Origin: Isurus oxyrinchus
Taxonomy: Eukaryota
Direction of reading: 5' to 3'
Assembly: GCA_026770705.1 (NCBI GenBank)
Contig: JANJGN010000016.1
Coordinates: forward strand, 53,754,001-53,818,000
DNA length: 64,000 nucleotides
Below are positions 11,701 to 29,554 of this stretch, one piece after another (within the stretch, counting starts at the first letter, position 1; the number at the start of each line of letters is the position of its first letter). The notes beneath the pieces are model-generated. The model ran no database searches. It was not told where the DNA came from and worked only from the letters and a program-made list of their open reading frames with translations. A program made the position numbers and the translations under genes.

Positions 11701-14700
11701 CTCTGTACCCCATGAAGTCTCATGGTATCAGGTCAAACATCGGCAAGGAAACCTTCTGCTGATAACCACGTACTGCCCTCTCCATCTCTCCACAGATGCT
11801 GTTAGACCTGCTGAGTTTTTCCAGCATTTTTTGTTTTTGATCCGAAATGACATAGCTGCTAGAATGGGTCTGTGGCAGGTGGTGAGGGAACCAACAATAG
11901 AAAAGAACATACTTGACCTCATTCTCACCAATCTGCCTGTCGCAGATGCATCTCTCCATGACAGTATCGGTAGGAGTGACCACCGCACAGTCCTTGTGGA
12001 GACGAAGTCCCACCTTCACATTGAGGAGACCCTCCATCGTGTGATGTTTTACTACCACTATGCTAGGGGAGATAGATTTTGATCAGATCTGGCAATTCAA
12101 GACCAGGCAACCATGAGGCACTGTGGCCTATTAGCAGCAGCAGAATTGCACTCCACCACGATTTGTAACCTCAGGCCTGGCATATCCCCCACTCTACCAT
12201 TACCACCAAGCCAGGGGTCATGCCTGGCTCAATGAAGAGTGTAGGAGGGCATGCCAGGAGCAGCACCAGGCATACCTAAAAATGGTGAAGCTACAATGCA
12301 GGACTACCTGCATACCAAACAGCAGAAGGAGCAAGTGATAGTCAGAGCTAAGTGATTCCACAACCAAGCTCTGCAGTCCTGTCACATCCAGCCATTAATA
12401 GTGGTGGACAATTATACAACTCACTGGAGGAGGAGGCTCCACAAATATCCCCATCCTCAGTGATGGGGGAGCCCAGCACATCAGTGCAAAAGACAAGGTT
12501 GAATCATTTGCTACAACCTTCAGCCAGAAATGTCAAGTGGATGGTCCATTTTGGCCTTCTCCGGAGGTCCCCAGGATCACAGATGCCAGTTTTCAGCCAA
12601 TTTGATTAAGTCCATGTGCTATCAAGAAACAGCTGAAGACACTGGATACTGCAAAGGTTATGGACACTCACAATATTCCAGCAATGGCACTGAAGATTTG
12701 TGCTTCTGAACTTGCCGCACCCCTAGCCAAGCCGTTCCAGTACAGCTACAACACTGACATTACCCAGCAATAGGGCACCAAGGAGCCCTAGCAATACTGG
12801 AGTCAATGGGAATCAGAAGGAAAACTCTCCACTGGTTGGAGCACAAAGGAAGATGGTTGTGATTGTTGGAGGTCAGTCATCTCAGCTCCAGGACATCACT
12901 GCAGGTGTTCCTCAGGGCAGTGTCCTAGGCCCAACCATATCAACGACCTTCCTTCCATCATAAGATCAGAAGTGGGGCTGTTCGCTGATGATTGCACAAT
13001 GTTCAGAACCATTCGTTACACCTCAGATACTGAAGCAGTCCATGTCCAAATGCAGCAAGACCTGAACAATATCCAAGCTTGGGCTGACAAGTGGCAAGTA
13101 ACATTTGCACCATATAAGTGCAAAGCAATGACCATATCCAACAAAAGAGAATGTAACCATTGCCCCTTGACATTCAGTGGCATTACCATTGCTGAATCCT
13201 CCACTGTAAAGATCTTGGGGGTTACTATTGACCAGAAACTGAACTGGACTACTCTTATAAATACTGTGGCTACAAGAGCAGGTCAGAGGCTAGGAATCCT
13301 GCAGCGAGTAATTCACCACCTGACTCCCCAAAGCCTGTGCACCATCTACAGGCAGGAGTGTGATGAAATACTCCCCACTTGCCCGGATGAGTGCAGCTCC
13401 AACAACACGGAAGAAGCTTGACACCATCCAGGATAAAGCAGCCTGCTTGATTGGCACCCCATCCACAAACATTCACATCCTCCACCACCGACACACAGTA
13501 GCAGCAGTTTGTATCATCTATAAGATGCACTGCAGGAATTCACAAAGGTTCCTAAGACAGCACCTTCCAAACCCACGACCACTGCCATCTAGAAGGACAA
13601 GGGCAGCAGATGGATGGGAGCACCACCACCTGGAAGTGCCTCTCCAAGTCACACGCCATCCTGACTTGGAAATATATCGCCGTTCTTTCACTGTCACTGG
13701 GCTAAAGCCCTGGAATTCCCTCCCTAACTGCACTGTGGGTGTACCCACACCACATGGACTGCAGTGGTTCAAGAAGGCAGCTCACCACCATCACCTCAAG
13801 GGCAATTAGGGATGGGCAATAAATGCTGGTCTGGTCAGCGATGCCCACATTCTGTGAATGAATAAAGAAAACTCCCATCATTCTCTCACCCATTCACTCA
13901 CTCACCCATTCACTGACTTACTGAAAGATGTTGACCTTTAATAAGTTACCTGAATATGCAGCTACTGTTATGCAAAGGGGACATGTCGTCCTTTCTACCA
14001 TATCTTCATGAAACCGATGATCTTCGCTGGGTTGTCTCTGACCCTTCAATGCTTCAACTGGGATCAAAAGATATGGCTGCAAAATTGTAAAAGGGTTGGG
14101 TCACAGAAATCTTTGGCAGTGTCAATGCAATCAGTATCGACCTGGATGACCTGGGTCACTGTCTTCAGTATTGGTTTCAGCTACTTTTTGAGATATGCTA
14201 GATATTTCCTGGTGCAAATGCACTATCTGGCTTTATTTCATAATTTCTATCATTAATATGATTTAGGGAATTACTGGAGATTGTCACTATATGGATGGGA
14301 TTCACTGGAGCAGGTGGTTGTGTTTGTTAATGGTTATTAACTTGCCCCTTGAATTATTTGTTTTACAGATAGTAATGCCTTTACTGTAATGTATTTGGCC
14401 ACCTCTGGTACTAATGATTTACCTGAGTATCTTGGTGTGGGAATGATTAATGGAGTTTCAGTAGCCTATTATGACAGTGGTACCCACCAGATTGTTTCCC
14501 GACAGCAGTGGATGGCAGACTCTTTTGATGCAGAGTACTGGGAATATCTCACAAATCGAGGCAATAAACACTGTGCCATTGCAAAGGAGAATCTGAAGAT
14601 GATAATGAAGAATACAAACCAGACGTCCGGTAAGAACAGTGATGCACAATCTCCCATTTGTCCTTTTACCTCCTGTCTCCTCACCATCCAAATTTGAATC

Positions 14701-17700
14701 TTTGGAATTCTCTTCCTCAAAAGGCGGTGGAGGCAGAGTCTTTAAACATTTTTTGAGGTAGATAGATCCTTGATAAGCAAGGTGGTGAAAGGTTATCAGG
14801 GATCGGCGGGAATGTGAAGTTGAGGTTACAATCAGTTCAGCCATGGTGCTGTTGAATAGTGGAGGAGACTCGAAGGGCCAAGTGGCCTACTCTTGCTCCT
14901 AATATGTTGGCCCCAAACACTCATTCCAAGCGATACAGTGAATTACGCGTACTTCTTTCAATTTAGTATACTTTATTCACTGCACACAATGTGGTCTTCT
15001 GTACACTGGGGAGACCAAACACAGACTGGAAGGCCACTTTTCAGGCCACCTCTATTCTGTCCACAAGTATAACCCTGAGCTTCCTGTCGCTGTCATTGTT
15101 AATTCTCCACCTTGCTCCCACTCTGACCTTTCTGTCCTTGGCCTGCTACAGTGTTCCAGTGAAGTTCAACATAAGCTCGAGGAACAGTACCTCACCTTTC
15201 GATTATGCTCTTTACAGCCTTCTGAAACCACGTAGAGTTCAGCTATTTCAGTCTGTAATCTCTGCTCCCATTTTTTTTCTCCTCAGTTTTCATTTTTCCT
15301 CGCGTTTTCCTCTTTTTTTTGCTCTTTTTTAGCCTTCAAGAGCATCATTCTTCCAATCAAACTGCCTACAGATTAATGTCAGTGGTAGGAATAACTCTGG
15401 AATCCTTACTAAAGAAGAGAAGAGATGAATCTCTAGAAAAGATAAATACAACAATGAATAGTCAGCATGGATTTCCAAAGGGAGAACCTTGCTTGGCTAA
15501 CATTATTGATCATTTCGAGGAGGTTGCAGAAGGAGTGGACAATGCTAATGCATTTGAGACTTTTTTTCTGGATTTTCAAAAGACCTTTGACAAGGTGCCT
15601 TGTAATAGATTAATGAATAAGGTCAGAGAATGTGGAGTCAGGGGACAAGTGGCAGAATGGATTGCTAGCTCTTCAAGGCTGAAAGCAAAAAGTGGAATAA
15701 AGGGCAGAAATAAATTCAGAGTGGCAGAAGGTGGAAGTGGTGTTCCACAAGGATCAGTGCTGGGACAATTGCCATTCACAATTTACATTAAAGATTTGAA
15801 CTTTGGAGACAAAAACACAATTTCAAAAATTGCAGATGACACCAAATTGTTGGGGAGGTGGGATGAGGGAATCAATACTGAGGACTGCAACAAATTACAG
15901 GAGGTCATCAATAAACTTGCAGAATGGGCAAATAACTGGCAAATGAAGTTCAGTACAGATAAATGTGAGGTAAAAAACAAAGAAAACTGCGGATGCTGGA
16001 AATCTAAAACAAAAACAGAATTACCTGGAAAAACTCAGTAGGTCTGGCAGCATCGGCGGAGAAGAAAAGAGTTGACGTTTCGAGTCCTCATGACCCTTCG
16101 ACAGAACTTGAAGTTCTGTCGAAGGGTCATGAGGACTCGAAACGTCAACTCTTTTCTTCTCCGCCGATGCTGCCAGACCTACTGAGTTTTTCCAGGTAAT
16201 TCTGTTTTTGTTTTAAATGTGAGGTAATACGTTTTGGTAGCAATAGGGAAATAGCCTATTACTCGGAAAGTGAGGATCTAGGTTGAGGGCAACAACAAAG
16301 GGATGAGATTACAAATACATTAATCATTAAAATTTGCGCCACAGGATATAATAAAAAAGCAATCCAAGCACTAGGCTTTATTTCTACAGAGATCAAATTG
16401 CAAATAGGGAAGATATACTATACCCTTATCGAACCTTGGTTAGACCACACTTAGAGTACTGTGTGCAGTTCTGGTTGCCATATTACAAAAATGATAAAGA
16501 GCACTGGGGCATTTGGAGAGAGGGCAGAGAGGATTTACAAGGATAAAAGCAGAAATTTGTGAGTATACAGATCAGAAAAGGATTGACTGACTATGTCTCT
16601 TTTCCCTTGCAAAAAGAAGTCTGATGGGTGACCTAATAGAGATGTTTAAAATTGTGAAAGGTTTTGATAGAGTGGACACAGAGAGAAGGTTTCCTCTTGT
16701 GGAGAAAAGCATAATTAGAGGCCATCAATTTAAGGTAGACACCAAGGGATCCTACAGGGATCACCCAAAGAGTGGAGAGAATGTGGAACTCAGTACCACA
16801 AGGAGGTAACTGCCCTTTATTCTTACTCTCTGCTTTCTGGTTGAAGCGAATAGTATAGATGCATTTGAGGGGAAGCTAGACAAGTATATGATGGAGAAGG
16901 GAACACAGAATTATAGTGATAGATTTAGATGAGGAAAGAAAGGGATGGAGGCTTAAGTGGAGTATAAACACCAGCATGGACTGGTTGGGCCTGTTCTGTG
17001 CCAGAAATCCTACGTAGTCCTTCACAAACACATCTTTTGTTTCTTTATTTGCCCTAATATCACTCCCTTTGGCTCAGCAACACCAACTCTTTTGTCACTT
17101 AACCTCTCCTGTCTTCCAACCTATCACTGATCTCTTTTGTTCCTTTCATACTCTTCCCCCACACCCCCCTTTCAGTTGCTCAAAACCAATTACTTTTCCC
17201 AGTCTGATGTAAGGTTACCGACCTGCAACTATTTCTCTCTCCGTGGATGTTAGCTGACCTGTGTTTTTTTTAATATATATCTTCCAATAATTGCTCCGTT
17301 TAATGATATCCAGCCAGAGTTGTACTGCAGCCTGTGACACTGGGATGTACAATATTTGGGCCACCCTGGCAACACCTGTTATACAGGTATCTTGACATCT
17401 AATAGGCAGGCTAATTCCACATTTTTTAATGCTTTCATGAGATGTGGGCGTTGCTGACAAGGCCAGCATTTTTTGCCCATCTCTAATTGCCATTGAACTG
17501 GTTGGCTTGCTAGGCCATTTCAGAGGGTAGTTAAGAGTCACAACCACATTACTGTGCATCTAGCATCACAGTAGGCCAGACCAGGTAAGGTAAGGATGAC
17601 AGATTTCCTTCCGAAAGGATATTAGTAAACCAGATGTGTTTCATGGCTTCAATACTGAGACCAGGTTTATATTCCAGATTTTATTAATTGAATTTATGGC

Positions 17701-20700
17701 TTCTTTCAGGCTGTGACCTGTGACCTCAGTTTGCAGTCAAACATTACATCAGGGAGGTCAACCAGGCTCTACGCTATGAGCGTAGAGTGAGGACGAGAGA
17801 CTCACTAGACTTTACCCATATTTCAGGTTTCTTGATGGTGAAAGGTGTCATTGAGTTCACCTATATTCCACTGCCTCTCCCCATTGAACCCTGTGGGGGG
17901 GTGGGGGGGAGTTTTACTGTCCCCTGCCAGTGGGTTTGAAGATGGGGTGGGGGGGGCTTCCTAAAATACAATACGCCACTTGCCTGCCCGCCATGACCTG
18001 TCACCCATTTTACAGGTGGCCACGGAGGGGCCTGGTGGCCCACCTGCCCTTGGGTCTGTTGAGGACCTCAAGTAGCCAAATAATGGCCATTTAAGTGCCT
18101 CATCCCACTATTTTACCCACAGCATGGTGAGACCCACGCTACATGGGTCGACCAGCAGCTTTTAGTAGGCGAGCCAATGTCGGGCAAGGAGGAGTGCTGG
18201 GGACCTCTTTTGGGGGTCTCCTGTGCTCATTGAACCAACTCCTGCATCCGCAAGGCCTGCCACAGCCCCGCAGCCACCCCCCCGACCCACTCCCCCCACT
18301 TAACTCTCCCCGTTAGCCCCTCAAAACCGCCTGCCATCAAGGCCCGGCTGACATCCTCGACATATCTGAACTCCAGCCTCCATTCACTCCTCCACTACAG
18401 AGACTGGCTGTACTCCTAGCAATGGCCACCACTCAAACCTGGTGCTGCTAACACTACAGCTCTCTAAAGCAGGACTTCCTCCCAATGGAGGGGCTGAAGT
18501 CCCATCTCTAGCCAATTAACATGCATAGAGCTTTAAATGACCGCAGGTCAACCGGTATGCGTTCCCCCCAACTCTTCGGGTGGCGGGGTGAGAATCCTGG
18601 CCAAGTGAAAACTCCTGTCCTGGAATATTCATCAATCTTTAGCGATTTCGCTCCCTTGAATGTAAGGCTGGTTTGTGACCACATGCAGCACATCATGCAG
18701 GCCTGTGCCTGCTACCCTGGCAGCAGTCCTGATTCTTTCAGTGCTGTGCCAGTGCTCTGCATTGCCTTTGGTTCAAAGAGGTCATCGGATTACAGGCTGG
18801 GTGACAAGGGTATATGCCTGGATATGACTCGCCACTCCTGTACGAAAGCCATGCATAACTACAGTGCAAATGTTACCTGGAAGATGACTTCTCCATGAAG
18901 GGAAGAGGATTTCCTTTCTCCTGTAGACCATCAAGACCAGGACATACAACAAGGTTTCTGAAAAGCAATTTGGAGATATCCACAGAAAATAGATTCCTTA
19001 ATGGACACTTTCTTCAGCACTGCACATAGGCTCAGTTTTACATTAATAGCTGCCACTGTGAGATAACCAATAAAATAATCTATGCTGGTAAGCTCAAAGA
19101 AGGACCTGTTACTGCAATATGGATTCTGCAGAGAGATCTATTACTGTAATAATGAGTTCTCAGAGAGATCCATTACTATAACACTGAGCCCACAGAGAGA
19201 TCCATTACTGTAACACTGAGCCCACAGATAGATCCATTACTGTAACACTGAGCCCGTAGAGAGATCTATTACTGTAACACTGAGCCCACAGAGAGATGTA
19301 TTACTGTAACACAGCCCACAGGGAGATCCATTACTGTAACAGCCCACAGGGAGATCCATTACTGTAACACTGAGCCCACAGAGAGATGTATTACTGTAAC
19401 ACTGAGCCCACAGAGAGATCCATTACTGTAACACTGAGCCCACAGAGAGATCCATTACTGTAACACTGAGCCCACAGATAGATCCATTACTGTAACACAA
19501 CCCACAGAGAGATCTCTTATTGTAATACTGAACCCACAGAGAGATCTACTTCTGTATAATTGAGCCCATGGAGAGATGCATTACTGTAACACAGCCCACA
19601 AAAAGATCTATTACTATATTACTGAGCTTACTGAATAAAAAATACCGTAATATTGAGCCCACCGAGAGATCCATTACTGTAATACTCAGCCCACAGTGAG
19701 ATCTATTGCTAATAACACAACCCACAGGGAGATCTTTTACTGTAATACTGAGCCCACAGGGAGATCTATTACTGTAATATTGAGTGCACAAAGAGATCTA
19801 TTACAGGAACACTGAGACCACAGACAGATCTATTACTGTAACACTGAGCCCACAGAGAGATCTATTACTGCAACACAGCCCACAGAGAGATCCATTTCTG
19901 TAATACTGAGCCCACAGAGAGAGATCTATTACTGTAACACAGCCCACTGAGAGATCTGTTAATGTAACACTGAGCCCACAGAGAGATCCATTACTGTAAT
20001 ACTGAGTCTACAGAAAGAGATCTATTACTGCAACACAGCCCACAGAGAGATCCATTTCTGTAATATGGAGCCCACAGAGAGAGATCTATTATTATAACAC
20101 AGCCCACAGAGAGATCTATTACCGCAATACTGATCTCACAGAAAGATCTATTACTGTAATACTGAGACCACAGAGAGATCTATTACTGTAACAGCCCACA
20201 GAGAAATCTATTAGTGTAATGCTAAGCCCACATAGAGATCCATTACTGTAACACTGAGCCCACAGAGAGATCTATTACTGTAACACAACCCACAGAGAGA
20301 TCTGTTACTGTAATACTGAGCCAACGGAGAGATCCTTTTATATAATACTGAGCCCACAGGGAGAGTTTTATTACTGTAATATTGAAACCACAGAGAGATC
20401 TATTACTGTATTGCTGAGCCCACAGAGCAATCCATTACATTAATACTGAGCCCACAGAGTAAACTGGCAATGTAATAAGGGACTTTTTAATTAACAATTG
20501 ATTTTTATTTCTCTGCTGATCTTTGACAGGAATTCACATTTTCCAATGGATAAGGACTGTTGAGGTCGCTGAAGACGGTTCCATTAAGAGATCAATGCGC
20601 TTTGGATTTGATGGAAAGGACTATATTAGTTTAGAGTCAGACAGAATGAGATGGGTCGCATCCAATCACATTGCAGTGAAGACTATGGAGAAATGGAATT

Positions 20701-23700
20701 CGGATGAAGCCTGGAATAAATATTGGAAATGGCAGTTGGAAGTAGAACTTGCTGAACGTTTAAAACTACGTTTACACTTTGGAAAGGAATACCTTAAAAG
20801 GAAAGGTATGTATTTCAGTTTGGATCCCATGTTCTGATCTAACTTCACTGGTCTATGAAAGTGTTCTCCCATTCCGTTCAGTGTCTGTCTATTGTTTGTG
20901 TTTTCACCCTTTCCCATTACAGTTCAGCCTGAAGTGTTCATCTCCAGAAGTGACCCCAATAATCAGTACAAGCCGCTCACTCTCTCCTGCCTGGTTACTG
21001 GGTTTTATCCTGTAGACATCGAGGTGAGCTGGCTAAGGAATGGAGAGGTAATGTCTGAGACACTATCTTCGGGGGTTCGACCCAACCACGATGGGACCCA
21101 TCAGATCCAGAAAGAGATTGAAATAAATGCTGGGGATGAGGATCAATACTCCTGTCAAATTGAACACAGCAGCCTGGCAGAGACCCAGCTCTATCAGTGG
21201 GGTAAGGAACTGTTCTAGATGTGTGTGTGTGTATAGATAAAAGTGAAAGAGCCTGTGTGACTGAGAGGGTTGGATGAATGAAATATAGACAATAACATGC
21301 AAGAGGAACTAAGGCCGTGTCAAGGAAACATTCAAAATAGAATGAAAGATTGAGAGCCTTGGAAAATTAAAATGAATCGCATCACCAAGCAAGTGATATA
21401 TTGTCATGTTTTGGGATTTTCCCATGTTTGACTTCAGGAATTTTTGATCTTATTTATATTGCTATGTAGCTGTTCAAGTAAATTTAACAGACAAATCTGG
21501 CTAGTCTTTGAAATGCTCCTGAAATTGACAACATAAGCAGAGGCTTTGAAAATCTACTTTGGAGGAAAAACTGCTCAGCTTTCAATCCCAAAAGTGTCAA
21601 TCAAGCAAAACTATTCATAGTATCAAAGTCAAAAACTTTCATACAAACATATGAATTAGGAGCAGGAGAACGCCACTCGGTCCTTCAAGCCTGCTCCACC
21701 ATTCAATAAGGTCTTGGCTGATCTGAATGTAACCTCAATCCCACATTCCTGCCTATCCCTGATAACCTTTCACCTCTCCGTTAATAAAGAATCTATCTTG
21801 CTCTGCCTTAAAATAGTCAAAGACACTGCTTCCACCATCTTTTGAGGAAGAGAGTTCCAAAGACTCATCTCTGTCTTAAATGAGCAACCCTTATTTTTAA
21901 ATGGTGACCCCCAGTTCTAGATTCTCCCACAAGAGGAAACATCCTCTCCATATCCACTCTGTCAAGTCCCCTCAGGATCTTAAAGATTTCAATTAACTCT
22001 TACTCTTCTAAATTTCAGTGGATACAAGTCTAACCTGTCCAGCCTTTCCTGAACATAACACTCCAGATGTGGTCTCACTATTGCTTTGTATAATTGAAGC
22101 ATAATCCTTCTACTTTTGTATTCAATTCCCCTCACAGTAAATAATAATATTCTATTAGCTTTCCTAATTACCTGCTGTATCTGCAAATTAACCTTTTGTG
22201 ATTCATGCACTAGTATGCCAGATCCCTCTGATTCTCAGAGCTTTGCAATCTTTCACCATTTAGATAAATGCTTCTTTTTTGTTCTTCCAGCCAAAATGAA
22301 TTTCACATTTTCCCACATTATACTCCATTTGCTAGATCTTTACCCACTCACTTAACCCATCTATGTCACTTTGTAGCCTCCTTTCACCCTCTTCACAATT
22401 TACTTTCCTACCTGTCTTTACGTCGTCAGCAAATTTAGCAGCCATTCCTTTGGTCCCTTCATCCAGGTCATTTATATATATATATTGTAAAAAGTAAAAA
22501 GGGATCAGTGCCATACCTGCCAACTAGCAAAAGACCCATTTATGCCAACTCTCTGCTTCCTGTGAGCCAGCCAATCTCCTATCCATGCCAATATGTTACC
22601 CTCTACACCATGAGCTTTTATTTTCTGTAATAATCCTTGATGTGGCACTTTATCAAATGCTTTCTGGAAATCTAAGGACAGTACATCCACCAGTTCTCCT
22701 TTATCCACAGCACATGTGACTCCTTCAAAGAACTCCAATAAATTGGTTAAATATGATTTCCATTTTACAAACCCATGTTGACTCTGTCTGATTGCCTTGA
22801 TTTTTTTCTAAGTGCCCTGTTATAACATTTTTATTATAGCTTCTAACATTTTCCCTATGACAGATGTTAGGCTAGCTGGCCTGTAGTTTCCTGCTTTCTG
22901 TCTCCCTCTCTTTTTGAATAAAGGAATTACATTTGCTATTTTCCAATCTCATGGAACCTTCCCCGAATCTAGAAAAATTAAATCCAGTGCATCAACTATC
23001 TCACTAGCTACTTCTTTCAAGATCTTAGGGTGAAGTCCATCCTGACCTGGGGCTATGTCAGCCCGCAGCCCCAACAATTTGCTCAATACCACTTCCCTGG
23101 TGATTGTCATTTTCCGAGTTCCTTTGTCCCTTCCACTTCCTGATTTATAGCTATTTCAGGGATATTACTTGTCTCCGTTATGGTGAAGACCAAAGCAAAA
23201 TACCTGTTTAATTCATCCGCCATCTTCTTACTTTCCATTATCAATTCCCCAGACACACTTTCTATAGGACCAGCACTCACTTTGTTAATTTTTTCTTATT
23301 GAAATATGAATAGAAACTTAATCTGTCTTTATATTACTAAACAAAAACAAAAATAAAAATACCTAGAAAAACTCAGCATCTGTGACAGCATCTGTGGAGA
23401 GGAACACATATGACTCTTCAACAGACCTGGCTTTCTCTTGTACTCTAACTCTTCCCTCCTTATTAATCTTTTTGTCATTCTTTGCTGTTCTTTATATTCT
23501 TTCCAATGTTCTGACCTGCCACCCATCTTTGCGTAATTGTATGCTTTTTCTTTAAATTTGATACTGTCTTTAACTTTTTTAGTTCACCACAGATGGTGGA
23601 CCCTCCCCTTGGAATTTTTCTTTCTCATTGGCATGTATCTATTTAGTGTATTCTCAAATATCCCTTTAAATGTCTGCCACTAAGCCGCTATTGACCCATC

Positions 23701-26700
23701 CCTTATTCTCATTTGCCAGTTCAATTTAGCTAGTTCCACTTTCATGCCCTCATAAATGCCTTTATTTAAGTTTAAAATACTAGTTTTTGACAAACTAATT
23801 TCTCCCTCAAAATGAATGAAAAATTCATTCACATAATGCTGCTACATATGGGTGCCTTCACTGAAGTTCTCAATTAATCCTATCTCGTTGCTCAGTACAA
23901 GGTCTGGTGTAGCCTGCTCTCTGGTTGGCTCCTGAACGTGCTGTTCTAAGAAATTATCCGGAAAACATTCCATGAACTCCTCATCTATGCTACCTTTGCC
24001 CACCTGATTTTTCCAGTCTACATCTTGATTAAAATCCCTCATGATTATTGCTGCACCTTTCTGGCAAGCTCCCATTATCTCTTCTTTTATACTCTGTCCC
24101 ATTATGTAGTTACAATTAGGGGACTTATATACCACTCCCACAAGTTACTTCTTGCCTTTATGATCCCTCGTCACAACCCAAACTGCTTCTATATCCTGGT
24201 TTCCTGAAATTCGGTCATCCCTCTCTCAAGTGCTAATACTATTATTAATTAACAGAGCCACCCCTGCACCTTTTTGTAACTTCTGTCCTTCCTAAATATC
24301 ACATAGCTTTCAATATTCAGGTCCCAATCTATGTCATCCTGTTGTCATGTCCCTGTAATGGCTATCAGATCATACTTATTTATTTCTATTCGTGCTATCA
24401 GTTCATCTGTTTTGTTTCGAATGCTATGTACGTTTAGATACAGGGCCTTTAGTTTTGTCCTTTTATTATTTTTATAGCGTCTAGCCTTATCTGCTGATGT
24501 ACTCTTAGAACTGTTCCATCTGTTCCTTCCTGTCACAGACTGTTTATCATTTCCCATATTAATACTTTTCTCTCTTGCCTTGTCTCTACTCTTTGGTTTA
24601 CCACATCTTCCCAAATTTCATCCTTTGCCCCACTATTCAGCTTAAAACCATCTCTAATTCTCTAGTTATGTGGCTCACGAGGACACCAGTCCCATCACAG
24701 TCCCAAATGTACAGATCCCACTTTCCCCATGCTGGTGCCAGTGCCCCATGAGCCGGAACCCACTTATCCCACACCTCTTAATCTTGTGTAAATGAACTCA
24801 AAAGAATTGAAAGACCACATCAAAAAAAAGAATAACTTATTACAAGGCAATAAAGATGTCAATCAAACAAAGCTTGCACTCCCTGGTAAGCCGTGTCAAC
24901 AGATCCCTGCTGAACTAAGTGCATTAGCTATTCTTGGAGCTCAGCCAAGCATTTGTAATGAGGCCATCTGAAGAAAGATATCTAGCCATCTGTTCTATTT
25001 CTGAAGAAAGGTCACAGCCTGAAACATTAACTCTGTTTCTTTCCACAAATACTGCTGAAGGGCTGAGTATTTCCAGCATTTTCTGTTTTATTTCAAATTT
25101 CTGGCGTGTGCAGTATTTTGTTTTTGGACTGGGGTGAACTTATTCAAAATAGTGCCCTAAGTCCACTTGAGAGGACAGAGAGGCCTCATTTTCATATCTT
25201 GTCAAAAGATGGCACCTCTCACAGTGCAGTAATCTCTCAGTACTGCCCCTCTGACAATGCAGAACTCTCTCAGTACTTGCCCTCCGACAATGCACTGCTT
25301 CCTCAGTACTGTCCATCTAACAGTTCAATGTTCCATTAATAATGCCCACCCAGTAATCTCTCAGTGTCCCCCTTCTAACAGGGTGTTACAGTTTCAGCAC
25401 TGCCCTTTTGAAAGTGGAGCACTCCCTGAGTACTGATCCTATGATAGTGCAACACTCCCTCAGTACTAACAATCTGAAATTGCAATGCTCCCTCAGTACT
25501 GTCCCTCTAACAGTGCCGTGCTTCCTCAGCACTGACCCTCTGACAGAGCCGTGCTTCCTCAGTGCTACAATGGAGTGACAGCTTAGATTTTGTGCTCAAG
25601 TCTCAATTGTGTCTCAAATGTGCTCGCTGCTACCTCAATCCCAGCACTAACCCAGTGCAACCCAGTGCTGTCAGGCTGCTAATCTGAGACCCAGGGGTGG
25701 ATTTTAACTTGCTGCTCATGTGTAAAGTTTGCTTTTATTTCAATGGAAATTGGGCATTTGCAGTCAGCTGACATGTGAGAATCATCAATTCCATTGACTC
25801 CTGGGCCATACAGTGCAATCCTGGGAAAAACAACACAAACAGAATAAATCTGAACTGGAATGGACCCCGGAACAATAAGATGATCTTGATATTATTTAAA
25901 TGTGTTTCAGAAATCCTGGAAAACAGTTGGGGACACTTGTATCCTGGATTTATAACAGGATTAGTGATCGCTGCCCTGGCTATTTTATTCGGGATAATCG
26001 GAAAAATCATCTGGAAAAGGTCATGGAGAGGTAAGAATCAGAGAAAGGGGAATGTAGAACTAAGGGGACAGAGTGAATGTAGGGGAATCTCCAGTACTGG
26101 GAGTACAGGACACTGAGAGGGGAGAGTGAGAGAGGGGGGAATGTGGAACTGAGGGGGCAGAGTGAATGTAGAGTAATCTCCAGTACTGGGAGTACAGGAC
26201 ACTGAGAGGGGAGAGTGAGAGAGAGGGGAATGTAAAACTGAGGGGACAGAGTGAGTGTGGGGGAATCTCCAGTACTGGGAGTACAGGACACTGAGAGGGG
26301 AGAGTGAGAGAGAGAGGAATTATATAGAATTTATAGAAAAGAACTGGGCCAACAGTTTTATGCCAATGTTTTTACTTCACACACACACGCCTCCTCCTAC
26401 CATACTTTATCCAAACCTTTCAGCATGTTGTATTACTCTTTTCTTTGTATTCACTATTGTCACTTTACCCCTTAATGTCCACATGCTGTGTATGCCTTTT
26501 CCTTCGGTTTCAGATTTTCTCTTATTGCTTTATTCATCAATACCCTGTCACTATTTGGTCATTTGTTCTTTTTTTAATTGAATTGGAAATGAAAATTCGA
26601 TTTAAAAGATACAGTGTGATGACCATGTGAGACTAGGTTACAAACGGGACAGGACTAGGTGATGAATACATCATGGTTTAGATTGTAAAAAGTTGAAAAC

Positions 26701-29175
26701 CCAGCATTGATCCTTGTGGCACTGTACCAGTTACAGCATGCCAATCTGGAAAAAACCATTTATCCCTACTCTCTGCTTCCTTTAATCCATGCTAATATGT
26801 TACCCCCTACACCACGTGATCTTATCTTGTGTAGTAACCTTTGATGTGACAACTTATAAAATGCCTTTTGGAAATCTAAGTACACAAATCTAAGTACCGG
26901 TTACCCTTTATTTGCCTTAAATGTTACTTTGTCAAAAGACTCTAATAGATTAGTTAAACGCGATTTTCCTTTCACAAAGACATGTTGGCTCTGCCACATC
27001 ACATAGTGATGTTCTAAGTACCCTGCTATAACCTCCTTAATAATGAATTCCAGCACTTTTCTTATGACAGATATTAGGTTAACTGGCCTATAGGTTCTTG
27101 TTTTCTGCCTTCCTCCACTCTTGAATAAAAGTGTTTCATTAGCCTGTTTTGCAATCTGCTGGGACTGTTCCATAAAATAAGGAATTTTGGAAAATTGTAA
27201 TTAATGCATCTACTATCTGTGCCTCCGCTTCTTTTAAGGTACAAAGATAGGTAGCAAAGTAAGTTGTAAGGAAGCTATAAAGAGTCTGCAAAGGGATATA
27301 GATAGGTTAAGTGAATGGGCAAGAATTTGGCAGATGGAGTACATTGTGAGGAAATGTAAGGTTGTCCACTTTGGCAGGAAGAATAGAAAAGCAGCATGTT
27401 ATTTAAATGGAGAAAGACTGCAGAATACTATTGTATAGATTGTTCTGGGTGTTCTTGTACATGATTCACAAAAAATTAGATATCCAGCAAATAATTAAGA
27501 AGGCAATGTGAATGTTGACCTTTATCACAAGGTGTGGGGGGGCGGGGGTGTTGGTGGTGCAGAGGAGTACAAAAGTTGCAAAGTTTTTCTACAACTGTAT
27601 AGGACTTCGGTCTTCTTAATTAAGGAGGGATATATTTGCATTGGAAGCAGTTCAGAGAATGTTCACTAGGCTGATTCCTCAGATGAAGGGGTTATTTTAT
27701 GAGGACAGGTTGAACAAGTTGGGCCTTCAACTCATTGGAGTTTTGAAAAATGAGAGGTGATCTTATTGAAACATTTAAGATTCTGAGGGGAGCTGACAGG
27801 GTAGATGCTAAGGGAATGTTTCCCATTGTGGGAAAATATAGAAGCAGGGAGCTCAGTTTAAAAATAAGGGGTCTCCCATTTAAGATGGTGAGGAAGAATT
27901 TCTTCTCCCAAAGGGTCATTAATCTTTGAGGTTCTCTTCTACACAAAGCAGTGAAGCCTGGGTTATTGAATATATTCAGTGCTGAGTTAGACAGGTTTTT
28001 GATCTAAAAGGGAGTCAAGGGTTATGGGTGGGAACCAGGCAGAAAAGTTGAGAAGAGGCCACATTAGATCAACCATGACCTTATTGAATGGTGGAGGAGG
28101 CTCAAGGGGCTCAGTAGCCTATTCCCACTCTTATTTCTTAGCATCATGCTTGCATTGGAGGCAGTACAGCGAAGGTTCACTGGATTGCTTCCTTGGATGA
28201 GAGGATTATCCTACAATGAGAAACTGGGTCTATATTCTCTGGAATTTAGAAGAATGAGAGGCAATCTCATTGGAACATACAAGATTCTGAAGGGGCTTGA
28301 TATGGTAGATGTTGAGAGGTTGTTTCCCCTGGCTGGGGAATCTAGGACATTGGCAGGTGTTTAGGGGGGTGGGTGGGGGGGGTGCAAATTCTCAGGATAA
28401 GGAGATGATCATTTAAGGTTGAGATGAGAAGATATTTCTGCAAAGGATGGTGAATCTTTGGAATCCTCTACCCCAGACAGTTATGGATGTTCCATTATTG
28501 AATACCTTTAAGGGTGAAATAGACAGATTTTTGGTCCCTTGGGGCATCAAGGGGTCTGGGGAGTGAGTGGGAAAGTGGAGTTGAAGCCCAAGATCAGCTA
28601 TGATCATATTGATTGATGGAGCAGGCTTGACAGGCCGTTTAGTCAACTCCATGTTCCAGTTTCTCGTGTTCTTATGTTCCCGGTTTTCTATCGTAACCTC
28701 TTAGACACTTTTTCCCAGGATGTATCACAAACAGAGTAAAAAATATAGTTCAGTAGAAAATTCTCTAGAGTTATCACAACTCAGTGGGTAACATGTGGTG
28801 GAAAATGATTTTCAATTAAAGCTCCTTACTCTTGTGCATAGAAACTGATAAAACAGGAATCCCACAGCAACCATTCCATATGAATCCTGGGAAAGGACAT
28901 CAAATCGGTGAGATTCCAAGTTTTACAAACTACTGTTTAAATTATTGGACTATTATTGTCCGCATTTACACTTTTCCTGAATATAGCGCAGTTGACTATG
29001 TTTAATATTTTCGTTAGTTTCAGCACAACCATTCCTGAAGATCGACCTCGCTCACCACCACCCAGAAACCATGGATAATAATATGGAACTGAAGTTGACT
29101 GAATCCTACATTCCGCTCACCACGGAGTCTTTTCAGAGAGAGTCACAATCCGTAGCACATGTGGAAGGTAATTAA
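8651..29175 (+). CDS. Non-classical MHC class I heavy chain, whole gene: join(8651-8702,14369-14629,20530-20805,20923-21201,25911-26030,28842-28907,29024-29175), 1206 nt, 401 aa
   Basis: Leader, alpha1, alpha2, alpha3, TM and two cytoplasmic exons. All introns are GT-AG and phase 1, and the spliced frame is open to TAA at 29173-29175. Confidence 0.9.
8725..9365. repeat. CT/TG-rich low-complexity microsatellite in intron 1
   Basis: Directly visible. Confidence 0.9.
9389..10206 (+). mobile_element. Penelope-like element, 5'-truncated (GIY-YIG endonuclease end plus 3' repeat), young
   Basis: [18 protein letters not shown]...[17 protein letters not shown]; flanked by duplicated atttaaagt (9380-9388 and 10209-10217). 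Confidence 0.9.
10255..10462 (+). mobile_element. LINE 3' end (same family as 11047-13870)
   Basis: Closely similar to 13665-13866 (WNSLPN...RFKKAA, gggcaataaatgctgg). Confidence 0.85.
11047..13870 (+). mobile_element. LINE (APE + RT, CR1-group-like, no visible ORF1) with a tRNA-derived 5' head
   Basis: A box TGGTGTAGTGG 11058-11068, B box GGTTCGAATCC 11122-11132; APE motif LDLILTN...SDH; RT motifs [10 protein letters not shown] and LFADD; internal deletions; small Penelope-tail piece at about 11780-11840. Confidence 0.85.
14369..14629 (+). CDS. MHC class I exon 2 (alpha1)
   Basis: ttttacag|AT...G|gtaag; [34 protein letters not shown]...QQWM...EYWE...NQT (N86 glycan site). Confidence 0.97.
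14690..14905 (+). mobile_element. CR1 3' end fragment
   Basis: [14 protein letters not shown] and ggcctactcttgctcc tail. Confidence 0.75.
14915..15235 (+). mobile_element. Old Penelope-like GIY-YIG fragment
   Basis: Degenerate match to 9389-9650. Confidence 0.75.
15974..16214. mobile_element. Palindromic (head-to-head) Penelope 3'-end insertion with TSD
   Basis: Perfect inverted arms 16006-16109 and 16111-16214 around a single G at 16110; TSD (t)aaatgtgaggtaa at 15960-15973 and 16214-16227. Confidence 0.95.
16112..16150 (+). ncRNA. Minimal type I hammerhead ribozyme-like motif (Penelope-associated); mirror copy on - at 16070-16108
   Basis: AGTT-CTGTCGA-A-GGGTC(ATGAG)GACTC-GAAAC-GTC-AACT: stem I AGTT/AACT, stem II hairpin, palindromic ACGT stem III; core variant CUGUCGA. 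Confidence 0.6.
17030..17275 (+). mobile_element. Old Penelope-like 3' repeat remnant
   Basis: tctgatg..aggtt..gacctg..ac followed by ctctctcc..gatg...gacctg tail motif. Confidence 0.55.
17422..17695 (-). mobile_element. SINE-like element sharing its body and tail with the 11047-13870 LINE (tRNA head not seen)
   Basis: Reverse strand: ...tggcctagcaagccaaccagtt joined directly to caatggcaattagagatgggcaa (LINE tail). Confidence 0.8.
17909..18615. mobile_element. GC-rich non-autonomous DNA element (MITE-like)
   Basis: Imperfect TIR ggagttttac / gtgaaaactcc. Confidence 0.45.
19105..20458. repeat. Minisatellite with a 30-34 bp unit (consensus CCATTACTGTAACACTGAGCCCACAGAGAGAT), about 40 copies
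   Basis: Period of 32 visible, e.g. 19201/19233; ends about 70 bp before the alpha2 exon. Confidence 0.97.
20530..20805 (+). CDS. MHC class I exon 3 (alpha2), lacking both canonical cysteines
   Basis: tttgacag|GA...G|gtatgt; [24 protein letters not shown]...KTMEKWN...[14 protein letters not shown]. Confidence 0.97.
20923..21201 (+). CDS. MHC class I exon 4 (alpha3, Ig C1-set)
   Basis: [17 protein letters not shown]...PNHDGTHQ...[10 protein letters not shown]; canonical splice sites. Confidence 0.98.
21640..24780 (-). mobile_element. CR1 LINE, near full-length decayed ORF2 plus ORF1 end
   Basis: [10 protein letters not shown] (APE), [17 protein letters not shown]; a Penelope tail fragment is nested at about 23335-23425. 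Confidence 0.9.
24995..25125 (+). mobile_element. Old Penelope 3' remnant with canonical hammerhead core
   Basis: CTGAAGA-aaggtcacagcct-GAAAC at 25001-25025, followed by the PLE tail. Confidence 0.6.
25145..25605 (-). repeat. Deu-SINE remnant with an internally amplified unit of about 30 bp (cagtactgccctctgacagtgcagcactccct-like)
   Basis: SINE flanks match 4200-4310; about 10 degenerate tandem units. Confidence 0.7.
25911..26030 (+). CDS. MHC class I exon 5 (connecting peptide and TM)
   Basis: tgtgtttcag|AA...G|gtaaga; [40 protein letters not shown]. Confidence 0.9.
26042..26318. repeat. 89-bp tandem repeat x3
   Basis: ccagtactgggagtacaggacactgagag at 26091, 26180 and 26269. Confidence 0.95.
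26675..28680. mobile_element. CR1 cluster: minus RT fragment (about 26675-27235), then plus 3' parts (about 27236-28145 and about 28146-28680)
   Basis: [12 protein letters not shown] on -; [17 protein letters not shown] and two CR1 tails on +. Confidence 0.85.
28842..28907 (+). CDS. MHC class I exon 6 (cytoplasmic; [22 protein letters not shown])
   Basis: ccttactcttgtgcatag| ... G|gtgaga; 66 nt, phase 1-1, open frame in non-repeat DNA. Confidence 0.7.
29024..29175 (+). CDS. MHC class I exon 7 (terminal cytoplasmic exon with YIPL)
   Basis: ttttcgttagtttcag|; [51 protein letters not shown] possible donor G|gtaatt at 29167/29168 could extend the gene further. Confidence 0.7.
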
Positions 29176-29554
29176 CCCACAACTGAACAGGAACAGAGAT
29201 CAGTCCAAATAGACACTTCAAATCCTGCAAATAATGTTTCTGATGTAAACACAGTAAAATGTAATCGAGGTAACAACATGACAAAACTCCTAACAAACCA
29301 AGAGGAAAGGGAAACAACACAGAGTTTACTGTGATCCACATTGAAAAAAAGCCCTGGAAATGAATTATTAGAAAACTAATCAAGACCCAAGAGTTCAGAG
29401 AGACTAGCCGTCATTGCAAGGGACATGGGAACTGAAACAGATGAGGATGACCAGCTGTATTCACAAGATCTGAAAACATTTACAATTGTATGAAAAGAGA
29501 AGCCATTCACCAATTAATACAAAATTGAAAAATATATCATTTGTCATATGTCAT

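What the first reader, a model, noticed from the sequence alone, without database searches (positions are those of the whole stretch)
20530..20805. Intact MHC class I gene whose alpha2 domain has lost both cysteines of the C101-C164 disulfide
Seen: C101 is Val (GTT 20559-61), C164 is Leu (CTT 20748-50), and alpha2 contains no Cys. Each codon is 2 substitutions from TGY, both replacements are aliphatic, and all 7 exons and splice sites are intact. Known: this bond is near-invariant in class I folds (classical, MR1, CD1, FcRn), and several non-classical lineages (UBA, UCA, UDA, UEA) are described in cartilaginous fish. Inference: this is a selected hydrophobic replacement that gives a more mobile alpha2 helix, either an unusual member of a known shark lineage or a new one.
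Basis: partly seen in the sequence, partly recalled or inferred. Interest (0 to 1): 0.85.

Follow-up and report, generated by a model that had tools for sequence, protein, structure and literature searches.

The report
Shark class Ib gene lacking alpha2 disulfide
This is an intact, transcribed shark non-classical MHC class I gene without the usual alpha2 disulfide, but every member of its large shark-only gene family (very probably the published UEA lineage) lacks that bond too, so it is an ordinary member of an unusual family.

Summary
In the alpha2 exon (20530-20805) the codon for C101 is GTT (Val, 20559-61), the codon for C164 is CTT (Leu, 20748-50), and the exon has no Cys. The gene has seven exons with intact GT/AG borders and sums to 403 codons. 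Transcript contigs of two species show it spliced.

The interpretation needs correcting: the loss is not private to this gene.
- The window holds the lamnid orthologue of an annotated great white shark gene (XP_041069653.1).
- That gene belongs to a shark-only, multicopy, MHC-chromosome family. I found 92 distinct alpha2 sequences from 13 species.
- Position 101 is never Cys in the family (Val in 83 of 89). Position 164 is labile (L, F, Y, C, S, G and others), with at least 24 changes on the tree.
- Outside the family, 142 of 179 distinct alpha2 domains carry the Cys pair, and most of the rest are gapped at one of the two positions.
- So there was one ancient loss at the family root. This gene's sub-lineage then fixed Leu at 164.

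By elimination the family is the UEA lineage of Almeida et al. 2021.

Interest is modest: a new member of a known kind.

The parts
8651..8702 (+). Exon 1: start codon and signal peptide ([17 protein letters not shown]), donor GTAAGT at 8703
   Evidence: tblastn of P0157; sequence read
14369..14629 (+). Exon 2: alpha1 domain, 100% identical in protein to great white XP_041069653.1; holds a conserved unpaired Cys (TGT 14572-14574) and the NQT glycosylation site
   Evidence: (Pfam MHC_I 8e-8)
20530..20805 (+). Exon 3: alpha2 domain without any Cys
   Evidence: (MHC_I 2e-13); covered by spliced transcript contigs
20559..20561 (+). Codon GTT = Val at the position of C101 (family-wide Val)
20748..20750 (+). 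Codon CTT = Leu at the position of C164 (Leu in this sub-lineage, variable in the rest of the family)
20923..21201 (+). Exon 4: alpha3 Ig C1-set domain with its own Cys pair kept
   Evidence: (C1-set 2e-17); joint 20805|20923 with GT..AG in RNA contigs
25911..26030 (+). Exon 5: connecting peptide and transmembrane segment
28842..28907 (+). Exon 6: cytoplasmic ([22 protein letters not shown])
29018..29175 (+). Exon 7: cytoplasmic tail ending at TAA 29173-29175

Best explanation
What it is. The window holds the lamnid-shark orthologue of a conserved, single-copy-per-species member of a large, shark-restricted, MHC-linked family of non-classical class I genes. The family is very probably the UEA lineage.

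How the loss arose. The alpha2 disulfide (C101-C164) was lost once, at the root of the family, when C101 became Val. Val stayed almost invariant afterwards. The partner position 164 was freed and drifted to many residues, mostly bulky hydrophobic ones; eight paralogues keep an orphan Cys. The sub-lineage that holds this gene fixed Leu before the galeomorph and squalomorph sharks split.

How the protein likely works. It is a type I membrane glycoprotein whose alpha1-alpha2 platform has no disulfide at all. Inferred: Val on the floor strand and Leu on the helix now pack against each other where the S-S bond used to be.

The groove. It keeps the C-terminal anchor set T143/K146/W147 and also Y59. 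The N-terminal anchors are gone: Y7 is V, Y159 is Q, Y171 is R, and W167 is R. Y84 is N. The near-invariance of the orthologues then suggests (inference) a monomorphic class Ib molecule that holds one conserved, non-classical ligand or serves as a receptor ligand.

Shown here: the sequence facts, family-wide absence of the bond, orthology, transcription and splicing.
Inferred: V-L packing, beta2-microglobulin pairing, the kind of ligand, and the name UEA.
For: Orthology. The alpha2 exon hits seven shark representatives at 60-80% identity, then drops to about 40%. A full-length search finds more than 100 relatives in 13 shark species and no other taxon above 50% identity. Great white P0157 (XP_041069653.1) matches alpha1 100% and alpha2 90/91.

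Family census. Among 92 distinct alpha2 sequences, position 101 is V 83, A 3, I 2, L 1 and Cys 0. Position 164 is L 29, F 23, Y 11, C 8, S 7, G 4 and others. Outside the family, 142 of 179 are C/C.

Cys patterns. No family member has a possible alpha1-alpha2 disulfide replacement as a rule; 28 of 86 have no Cys at all in alpha1-alpha2.

Tree. The family is one clade (SH-aLRT 99, stem 0.72), apart from a UDA-like clade that holds nurse shark QGX07421.1 and a chimaera sequence, and apart from a UAA-type clade. The gene sits in an orthogroup (support 93; 96* without the horn shark) spanning Heterodontiformes, Orectolobiformes, Lamniformes and Carcharhiniformes, with short branches.

Parsimony. 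Five changes at position 101 against 25 at position 164. Leu is found in 22 of 23 rows of the sub-lineage.

Orthogroup conservation. Most alpha1/alpha2 positions are 7/7 identical.

Expression. Contigs of X15 and X17 (organism A) and X18 (organism B) cover only the two exons. The joint 20805|20923 is GT..AG, and the loose end before 20530 equals the end of the alpha1 exon.

Model. AlphaFold2 gives pLDDT above 90 over residues 20-290, with best fold matches to class I heavy chains (TM 0.9).

Name UEA.
- The literature says sharks have two expanded Ib families, UBA (derived from UAA) and the more ancient UEA. UEA is multicopy and lies with single-copy UDA between brd2/b2m and slc39a7/rxrb (PMC12562908; PMC10751288).
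- The white shark has 16 'MHC-Ib' genes in that interval.
- In the horn shark, the UDA-like model XP_067865848 is followed directly by family members XP_067865849 to 879 on the same contig.
Against: - No sequence carrying the curated name UEA was found. All family members carry NCBI automatic names.
- The two J Immunol papers on UDA and UEA are not held.
- From my memory of its abstract, the UEA paper says the nine invariant peptide-binding residues are not conserved. This gene keeps four of them, which may or may not fit one of its three sublineages.
- Absence from rays and chimaeras rests on databases whose content I could not list.
- No CDS of orthologues was available, so dN/dS was not computed. 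The A-versus-B comparison gives only about 3 synonymous and 2-3 non-synonymous differences.
Confidence: 0.8

Rival explanations
1. The loss is adaptive. Removing the covalent staple makes the alpha2 helix and groove more plastic, or frees folding from oxidoreductase (ERp57/PDI)-dependent quality control. That would let the family load unusual, non-peptide or loosely bound ligands.
For: - The family has kept the disulfide-free state in all 86 genes analysed while expanding.
- Position 164 diversifies by sublineage, with at least 24 changes, as groove-lining positions of Ib families do.
- The bridge normally stabilises the part of the platform that has no Ig-domain support (PMC8236899).
Against: - There is no measurement of dynamics.
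- AlphaFold2 predicts a standard, confident helix.
- The equivalent bridge of the other membrane-distal domain was lost repeatedly in MHC evolution without known functional consequence (PMC8236899), so neutral loss with hydrophobic compensation is just as simple.
Confidence: 0.25
2. The family is a further shark class Ib lineage that has not been named, distinct from UEA.
For: - No curated UEA sequence turned up among over 120 relatives, although a 2019 nurse shark 'nonclassical MHC class I antigen' (QGX07421.1) did. That sequence falls in another clade.
- Retention of T143/K146/W147/Y59 fits poorly with my recollection of the UEA abstract.
Against: - The literature lists only two expanded Ib families in sharks.
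- This family is the large one. It is shark-only, on the MHC chromosome, and next to the UDA-like gene in accession order.
- A family of this size could hardly have been missed by the genome surveys of 2021-2023.
Confidence: 0.1
3. The gene is a decaying or unexpressed copy, and the two replacements are neutral damage.
For: The cytoplasmic tail ends at a TAA that the catshark and horn shark read through. The introns are full of retroelement fragments.
Against: - The ORF is open across seven exons with intact splice sites.
- Spliced transcripts occur in two species.
- The alpha1 protein is identical to the great white's, and orthologues in four orders are 73-90% identical in alpha2.
- Basking shark and great white models end at the same place.
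Confidence: 0.02

Closest known systems
Shark UEA non-classical class I lineage (Almeida et al., J Immunol 2021; cited in PMC10751288 and PMC12562908)
   Same: Found only in sharks. A very large multigene family. On the MHC chromosome in the Ib cluster that also holds UDA. Far from classical UAA (about 31-36% identity). Incomplete set of peptide-terminus anchors. Several sublineages.
   Different: Identity with UEA could not be shown directly, because no named sequence and no paper text were available. Whether that paper states the absence of the alpha2 Cys pair is unknown to me.
Great white shark LOC encoding XP_041069653.1 ('class I histocompatibility antigen, F10 alpha chain-like isoform X1')
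   Same: Orthologue with the same seven-exon product of 403 aa. Alpha1 is identical, alpha2 differs at 1 of 91 residues, and V101/L164 are the same.
   Different: About six differences in alpha3 and a few in the TM and tail. It comes from a different species, and its annotation is automatic with no lineage name.
Classical class I (shark UAA; solved shark structure 6lup, chicken BF2, HLA)
   Same: Same domain order, exon phases, N86-type glycosylation site and alpha3 Ig fold. Y59, T143, K146 and W147 are kept. The predicted fold superposes at TM about 0.9.
   Different: No C101-C164 bond. Y7, Y84, Y159 and Y171 are replaced. The protein is nearly invariant between species rather than fast-evolving. 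It has a long cytoplasmic tail.
Shark UDA lineage (nurse shark QGX07421.1, probable)
   Same: Non-classical, MHC-linked, and neighbouring in accession order.
   Different: UDA keeps the Cys pair and nearly all anchor residues, is present in a chimaera, and forms a separate clade. It is about 34% identical.
Loss of the equivalent bridge in the other membrane-distal domain (pa C11-C74 of class II alpha1 and all class I alpha1; Wu et al. 2021, PMC8236899)
   Same: An ancestral helix-to-sheet disulfide that evolution has discarded while the fold was kept.
   Different: That loss is in the domain supported from below by an Ig domain. Here the lost bridge is the 'well-conserved' one in the unsupported alpha2 half.

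Membership tests
MHC class I heavy chain | alpha1 and alpha2 domains of the MHC_I fold | tested here: met
   Pfam PF00129 matches alpha1 at 8e-8 and alpha2 at 2e-13, both above the cut-off. The AlphaFold2 model has pLDDT above 90, and Foldseek gives TM 0.9 to class I chains.
MHC class I heavy chain | membrane-proximal Ig C1-set domain with its Cys pair, then a TM segment and a tail, one domain per phase-1 exon | tested here: met
   C1-set matches at 2e-17. The motifs LSCLV and YSCQIEH are present. Exon borders were read.
MHC class I heavy chain | alpha2 intradomain disulfide C101-C164 (a hallmark, near-universal) | tested here: not met
   Val and Leu occupy these positions. Outside this family, 142 of 179 distinct alpha2 domains have the pair.
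Classical class I (UAA type) | invariant residues that hold the peptide termini (Y7, Y59, Y/R84, T143, K146, W147, Y159, Y171) | tested here: not met
   Kept: Y59, T143, K146, W147. Replaced: V7, N84, Q159, R171. This comes from the alignments, with HLA numbering taken from established knowledge.
Classical class I (UAA type) | high allelic polymorphism | tested here: inconclusive
   Few differences separate the two species and the runs, but the contigs mix paralogues and no population sample was analysed.
Shark UEA lineage | present in sharks, absent from rays and chimaeras | tested here: met
   All relatives above 50% identity come from 13 shark species. Caveat: I could not list the database's content for rays.
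Shark UEA lineage | large multigene family | tested here: met
   At least 9-11 clusters at 90% identity in the great white and about 18 in the brownbanded bamboo shark. The tree holds 86 gene-level rows.
Shark UEA lineage | MHC-linked, in the Ib cluster with UDA between brd2/b2m and slc39a7/rxrb | tested here: inconclusive
   The evidence is indirect only. All great white members lie on a contig of 115.8 Mb. The published white shark chr19 list (NC_054485.1) has 16 MHC-Ib genes in that interval, but I did not confirm that the 115.8 Mb contig is that chromosome. The horn shark UDA-like XP_067865848 is followed by family members 849-879.
Shark UEA lineage | clusters with the named UEA reference sequences | not testable with these tools
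   No protein named UEA was found in any search. The paper is not held.
Shark UDA lineage | clusters with nurse shark UDA and has chimaera orthologues | tested here: not met
   About 34% identity to QGX07421.1. The two form separate starred clades.

The most novel reading that the evidence does not exclude
The complete absence of any alpha1-alpha2 disulfide is an undescribed structural hallmark of the whole shark family, with Val fixed at 101 and position 164 used as a sublineage-specific groove residue. It would have a functional meaning, for example folding and loading that bypass the thiol-oxidoreductase step of the peptide-loading complex. On this reading, the gene's orthogroup is a deeply conserved specialised presenter. 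It is nearly invariant across four shark orders, carries a conserved free Cys on the alpha1 helix, and keeps only the C-terminal anchor set.
Probability: 0.12. Interest if true: 0.6.

Novelty: new member of a known kind. Interest (0 to 1): 0.3.

Why it matters
The C101-C164 bridge is one of the most constant features of class I and class II peptide-binding domains. Mutating it in mammalian class I impairs maturation (established knowledge, not tested here). A whole gene family that has done without it since before the modern shark orders split shows that the platform can be held together without covalent help. That makes the family a natural test case for what the bond contributes.

For this finding the practical message is narrower. 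The trait belongs to the family, not to this gene, and the family is almost certainly already in the literature.

Tried and rejected
- Reading the two key J Immunol papers (UDA 2020, UEA 2021) by PMC id, DOI and PubMed id: not held.
- Five full-text searches for a statement on the alpha2 cysteines of shark Ib lineages: nothing found. Reading PMC12562908, PMC9586880, PMC6523485 and PMC4364491 gave nothing either.
- The supplements of PMC10751288 label genes only 'MHC-Ib', without lineage names. The sheet with named query sequences was cut off.
So I had no orthologue DNA, no dN/dS and no coordinates.
- Three cluster look-ups for curated names gave only automatic NCBI names.
- Earlier notes of this scan hold nothing on this trait.
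- I first took a signal-peptide-like ORF at 14008 for the leader. tblastn with P0157 placed the real leader at 8651, so I dropped it.
- I first took PDB 7cpo for a shark structure. It is Anolis.
The exons were searched one by one by reference, and the database orthologue P0157 stood in for the whole protein in the tree and the fold.
- Complex prediction with beta2-microglobulin was not run, because the session held no shark beta2m sequence.
Full report
**Observation.** The stretch 20530-20805 is a phase-1 exon flanked by AG and GT. It translates without a stop to a class I alpha2 domain, with Pfam MHC_I at 2e-13. Alignments to solved class I chains place Val (GTT 20559-61) opposite C101 and Leu (CTT 20748-50) opposite C164. 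The domain has no Cys.

**Gene model.**
- I used the great white shark protein P0157 (XP_041069653.1) as a guide and read each border.
- The exons are: leader 8651-8702, alpha1 14369-14629, alpha2 20530-20805, alpha3 20923-21201, TM 25911-26030, and cytoplasmic exons 28842-28907 and 29018-29175.
- All introns are GT..AG and all exons are phase 1. The lengths add to 1212 nt, which is 403 codons plus the stop.
Exons were searched one by one by reference, and P0157 served as the full-length proxy.

**Expression.**
- I laid contigs of four public runs on 20470-21400.
- Two runs of organism A (X15, X17) and one of organism B (X18) cover only the two exons, with zero depth in the 117-nt intron and in the flanks.
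- X15 and X17 carry the exact joint 20805|20923 (GT..AG).
- The letters hanging off before 20530 are the last 30 bases of the alpha1 exon.
- So the gene is transcribed and correctly spliced in two closely related species. None of the four runs shows a variant at codon 101 or 164.
- A fourth run (X8) has amplicon-like depth over alpha2, the intron and alpha3, with many paralogue variants.

**Relatives.**
- A full HMMER scan of 1.84 billion representatives with the alpha2 exon gave seven shark proteins at 60-80% identity, then a drop to about 40%.
- A full-length search with the best hit listed 120 proteins. Those above 50% identity come from 13 shark species of seven orders and from no other taxon.
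- All carry NCBI automatic names.
- The window's alpha1 is identical to the great white protein, alpha2 differs at one residue, and alpha3 at about six. The window is therefore a sister lamnid's orthologue of an annotated gene.

**The disulfide in the family.**
- I found 92 distinct alpha2 sequences at least 50% identical to the window's.
- Position 101 is V in 83, A in 3, I in 2, L in 1, and never Cys.
- Position 164 is L 29, F 23, Y 11, C 8, S 7, G 4, D 3 and a few others.
- Of 179 distinct alpha2 domains outside the family, 142 have C/C. Most of the rest are simply gapped at one of the two positions, and only nine have another residue at either position.
- No other Cys pair replaces the bond. 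28 of 86 family ectodomains have no Cys at all in alpha1-alpha2, 19 have a lone C42, and this gene's orthologues have a lone C69.

**Tree.**
- I built a maximum-likelihood tree of 102 ectodomains.
- The family is one clade (SH-aLRT 99, stem length 0.72).
- It is apart from a clade that holds nurse shark QGX07421.1 and a chimaera sequence. That clade keeps the Cys pair and nearly all anchors, as the literature describes for UDA.
- It is also apart from a UAA-type clade.
- The window's orthologue sits in an orthogroup with horn shark, zebra and bamboo sharks, catsharks and Mustelus. The orthogroup has short branches, and most alpha1/alpha2 positions are identical in 7 of 7 species.
- Parsimony needs 5 changes at position 101 but 25 at position 164. 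Leu occupies position 164 in 22 of the 23 rows of the sub-lineage that includes Heptranchias and Pristiophorus.
- The simplest history is one C101-to-Val change in the family ancestor, release of the partner position, and early fixation of Leu in this sub-lineage.

**Which named lineage.**
- Reviews state that sharks have two expanded Ib families: UBA (derived from UAA) and the older UEA. There are also single-copy UDA, UFA and UGA genes (PMC12562908).
- UEA is multicopy and lies with UDA in the cluster between brd2/b2m and slc39a7/hsd17b8/rxrb/col11a2 (PMC10751288).
- The white shark table lists 16 'MHC-Ib' genes in exactly that interval.
- The family has 9-11 clusters in the great white, all on a contig of 115.8 Mb. 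I did not confirm that this contig is chr19.
- In the horn shark, the UDA-like model XP_067865848 is followed directly by family members XP_067865849-879 on the same contig.
- The whale shark models for the two kinds are three accession numbers apart.
- By elimination the family is UEA. I put this at about 0.85-0.9, not more, for three reasons. No named UEA sequence was found, the paper is not held, and coordinates could not be fetched.

**Structure and mechanism.**
- AlphaFold2 on P0157 with a 94-sequence alignment gives pLDDT above 90 over residues 20-290, with both alpha2 helix segments intact. Its best structural matches are class I heavy chains at TM about 0.9.
- No member of this family has a solved structure.
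- The groove keeps Y59, T143, K146 and W147. It has V7, N84, Q159, R167 and R171.
- Wu et al. 2021 (PMC8236899) call this bridge well conserved, and note that it stabilises the half of the platform with no Ig domain beneath it. The same paper shows that the twin bridge of the other domain was lost several times without harm.
- So a neutral loss with hydrophobic compensation and an adaptive gain of plasticity both remain open. I favour the first as the default.

**Verdict.** The gene is intact and expressed, and its protein is strongly conserved between species. The family is known, and the gene is annotated in sister species. Whether the missing bond has been pointed out in print I could not check. 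Interest is modest.

Noticed in passing
window 29173-29331: The tail ends at TAA 29173-75 (VEGN*), as in the great white and basking shark models. The next 52 codons stay in frame and resemble the longer tails of the catshark and horn shark, up to ...ETTQSLL (58% identity across the stop). This looks like a lamniform-specific truncation, or a stop bypassed by splicing from the AAG|GTAAT at the same place.
   Followed up: partly
window 14572-14574: An unpaired Cys (TGT) on the alpha1 helix, at shark position 69 (about HLA 71). It is conserved in all 7 orthologues but is Ser, Thr or Ala in most paralogues. Many paralogues instead have a lone Cys at position 42.
   Followed up: partly
window 20470-21237 (run X8, organism B): Small runs of 25-45 million letters hold alpha2, the intron and alpha3 at depths of 10^4-10^5, with hundreds of variant contigs. 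This looks like PCR amplicon typing of this gene family in a related species (studies P3 and P4).
   Followed up: no
window about 19200-20460: Intron 2 just upstream of the alpha2 exon appears to be a long tandem array of a unit of about 40 bp (ctattactgt..gagcccacagag..). It gives repeated '[16 protein letters not shown]'-like ORFs on the minus strand.
   Followed up: no
window 21990-24620 (minus strand) and 15319-16041: Reverse-transcriptase and endonuclease-like ORF fragments of retroelements fill introns 4 and 2. The gene spans 20.5 kb for 1.2 kb of coding sequence.
   Followed up: no
window 26040-26300: Directly after the TM exon donor there are about four tandem copies of a unit of about 62 bp (ggggaatgtagaactaaggggacagagtgaatgtaggggaatctccagtactgggagtacaggacactgagag).
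   Followed up: no
PDB 9ch4_A: The best solved-structure match of the alpha1 exon (E 4e-11) is an entry called only 'Ig-like domain-containing protein' (268 aa). It is a class I-like chain. It is no closer overall than bird class I, and its origin was not identified.
   Followed up: no
P0344, P0152, P0153, P0291, P0303, P0340, P0280: Several NCBI gene models of 600-830 aa fuse two neighbouring class I genes. The whale shark LOC109922012 joins this gene's orthologue to its nearest long-tailed paralogue. LOC109923802 joins the UDA-like gene to a very divergent class I-like gene.
   Followed up: partly
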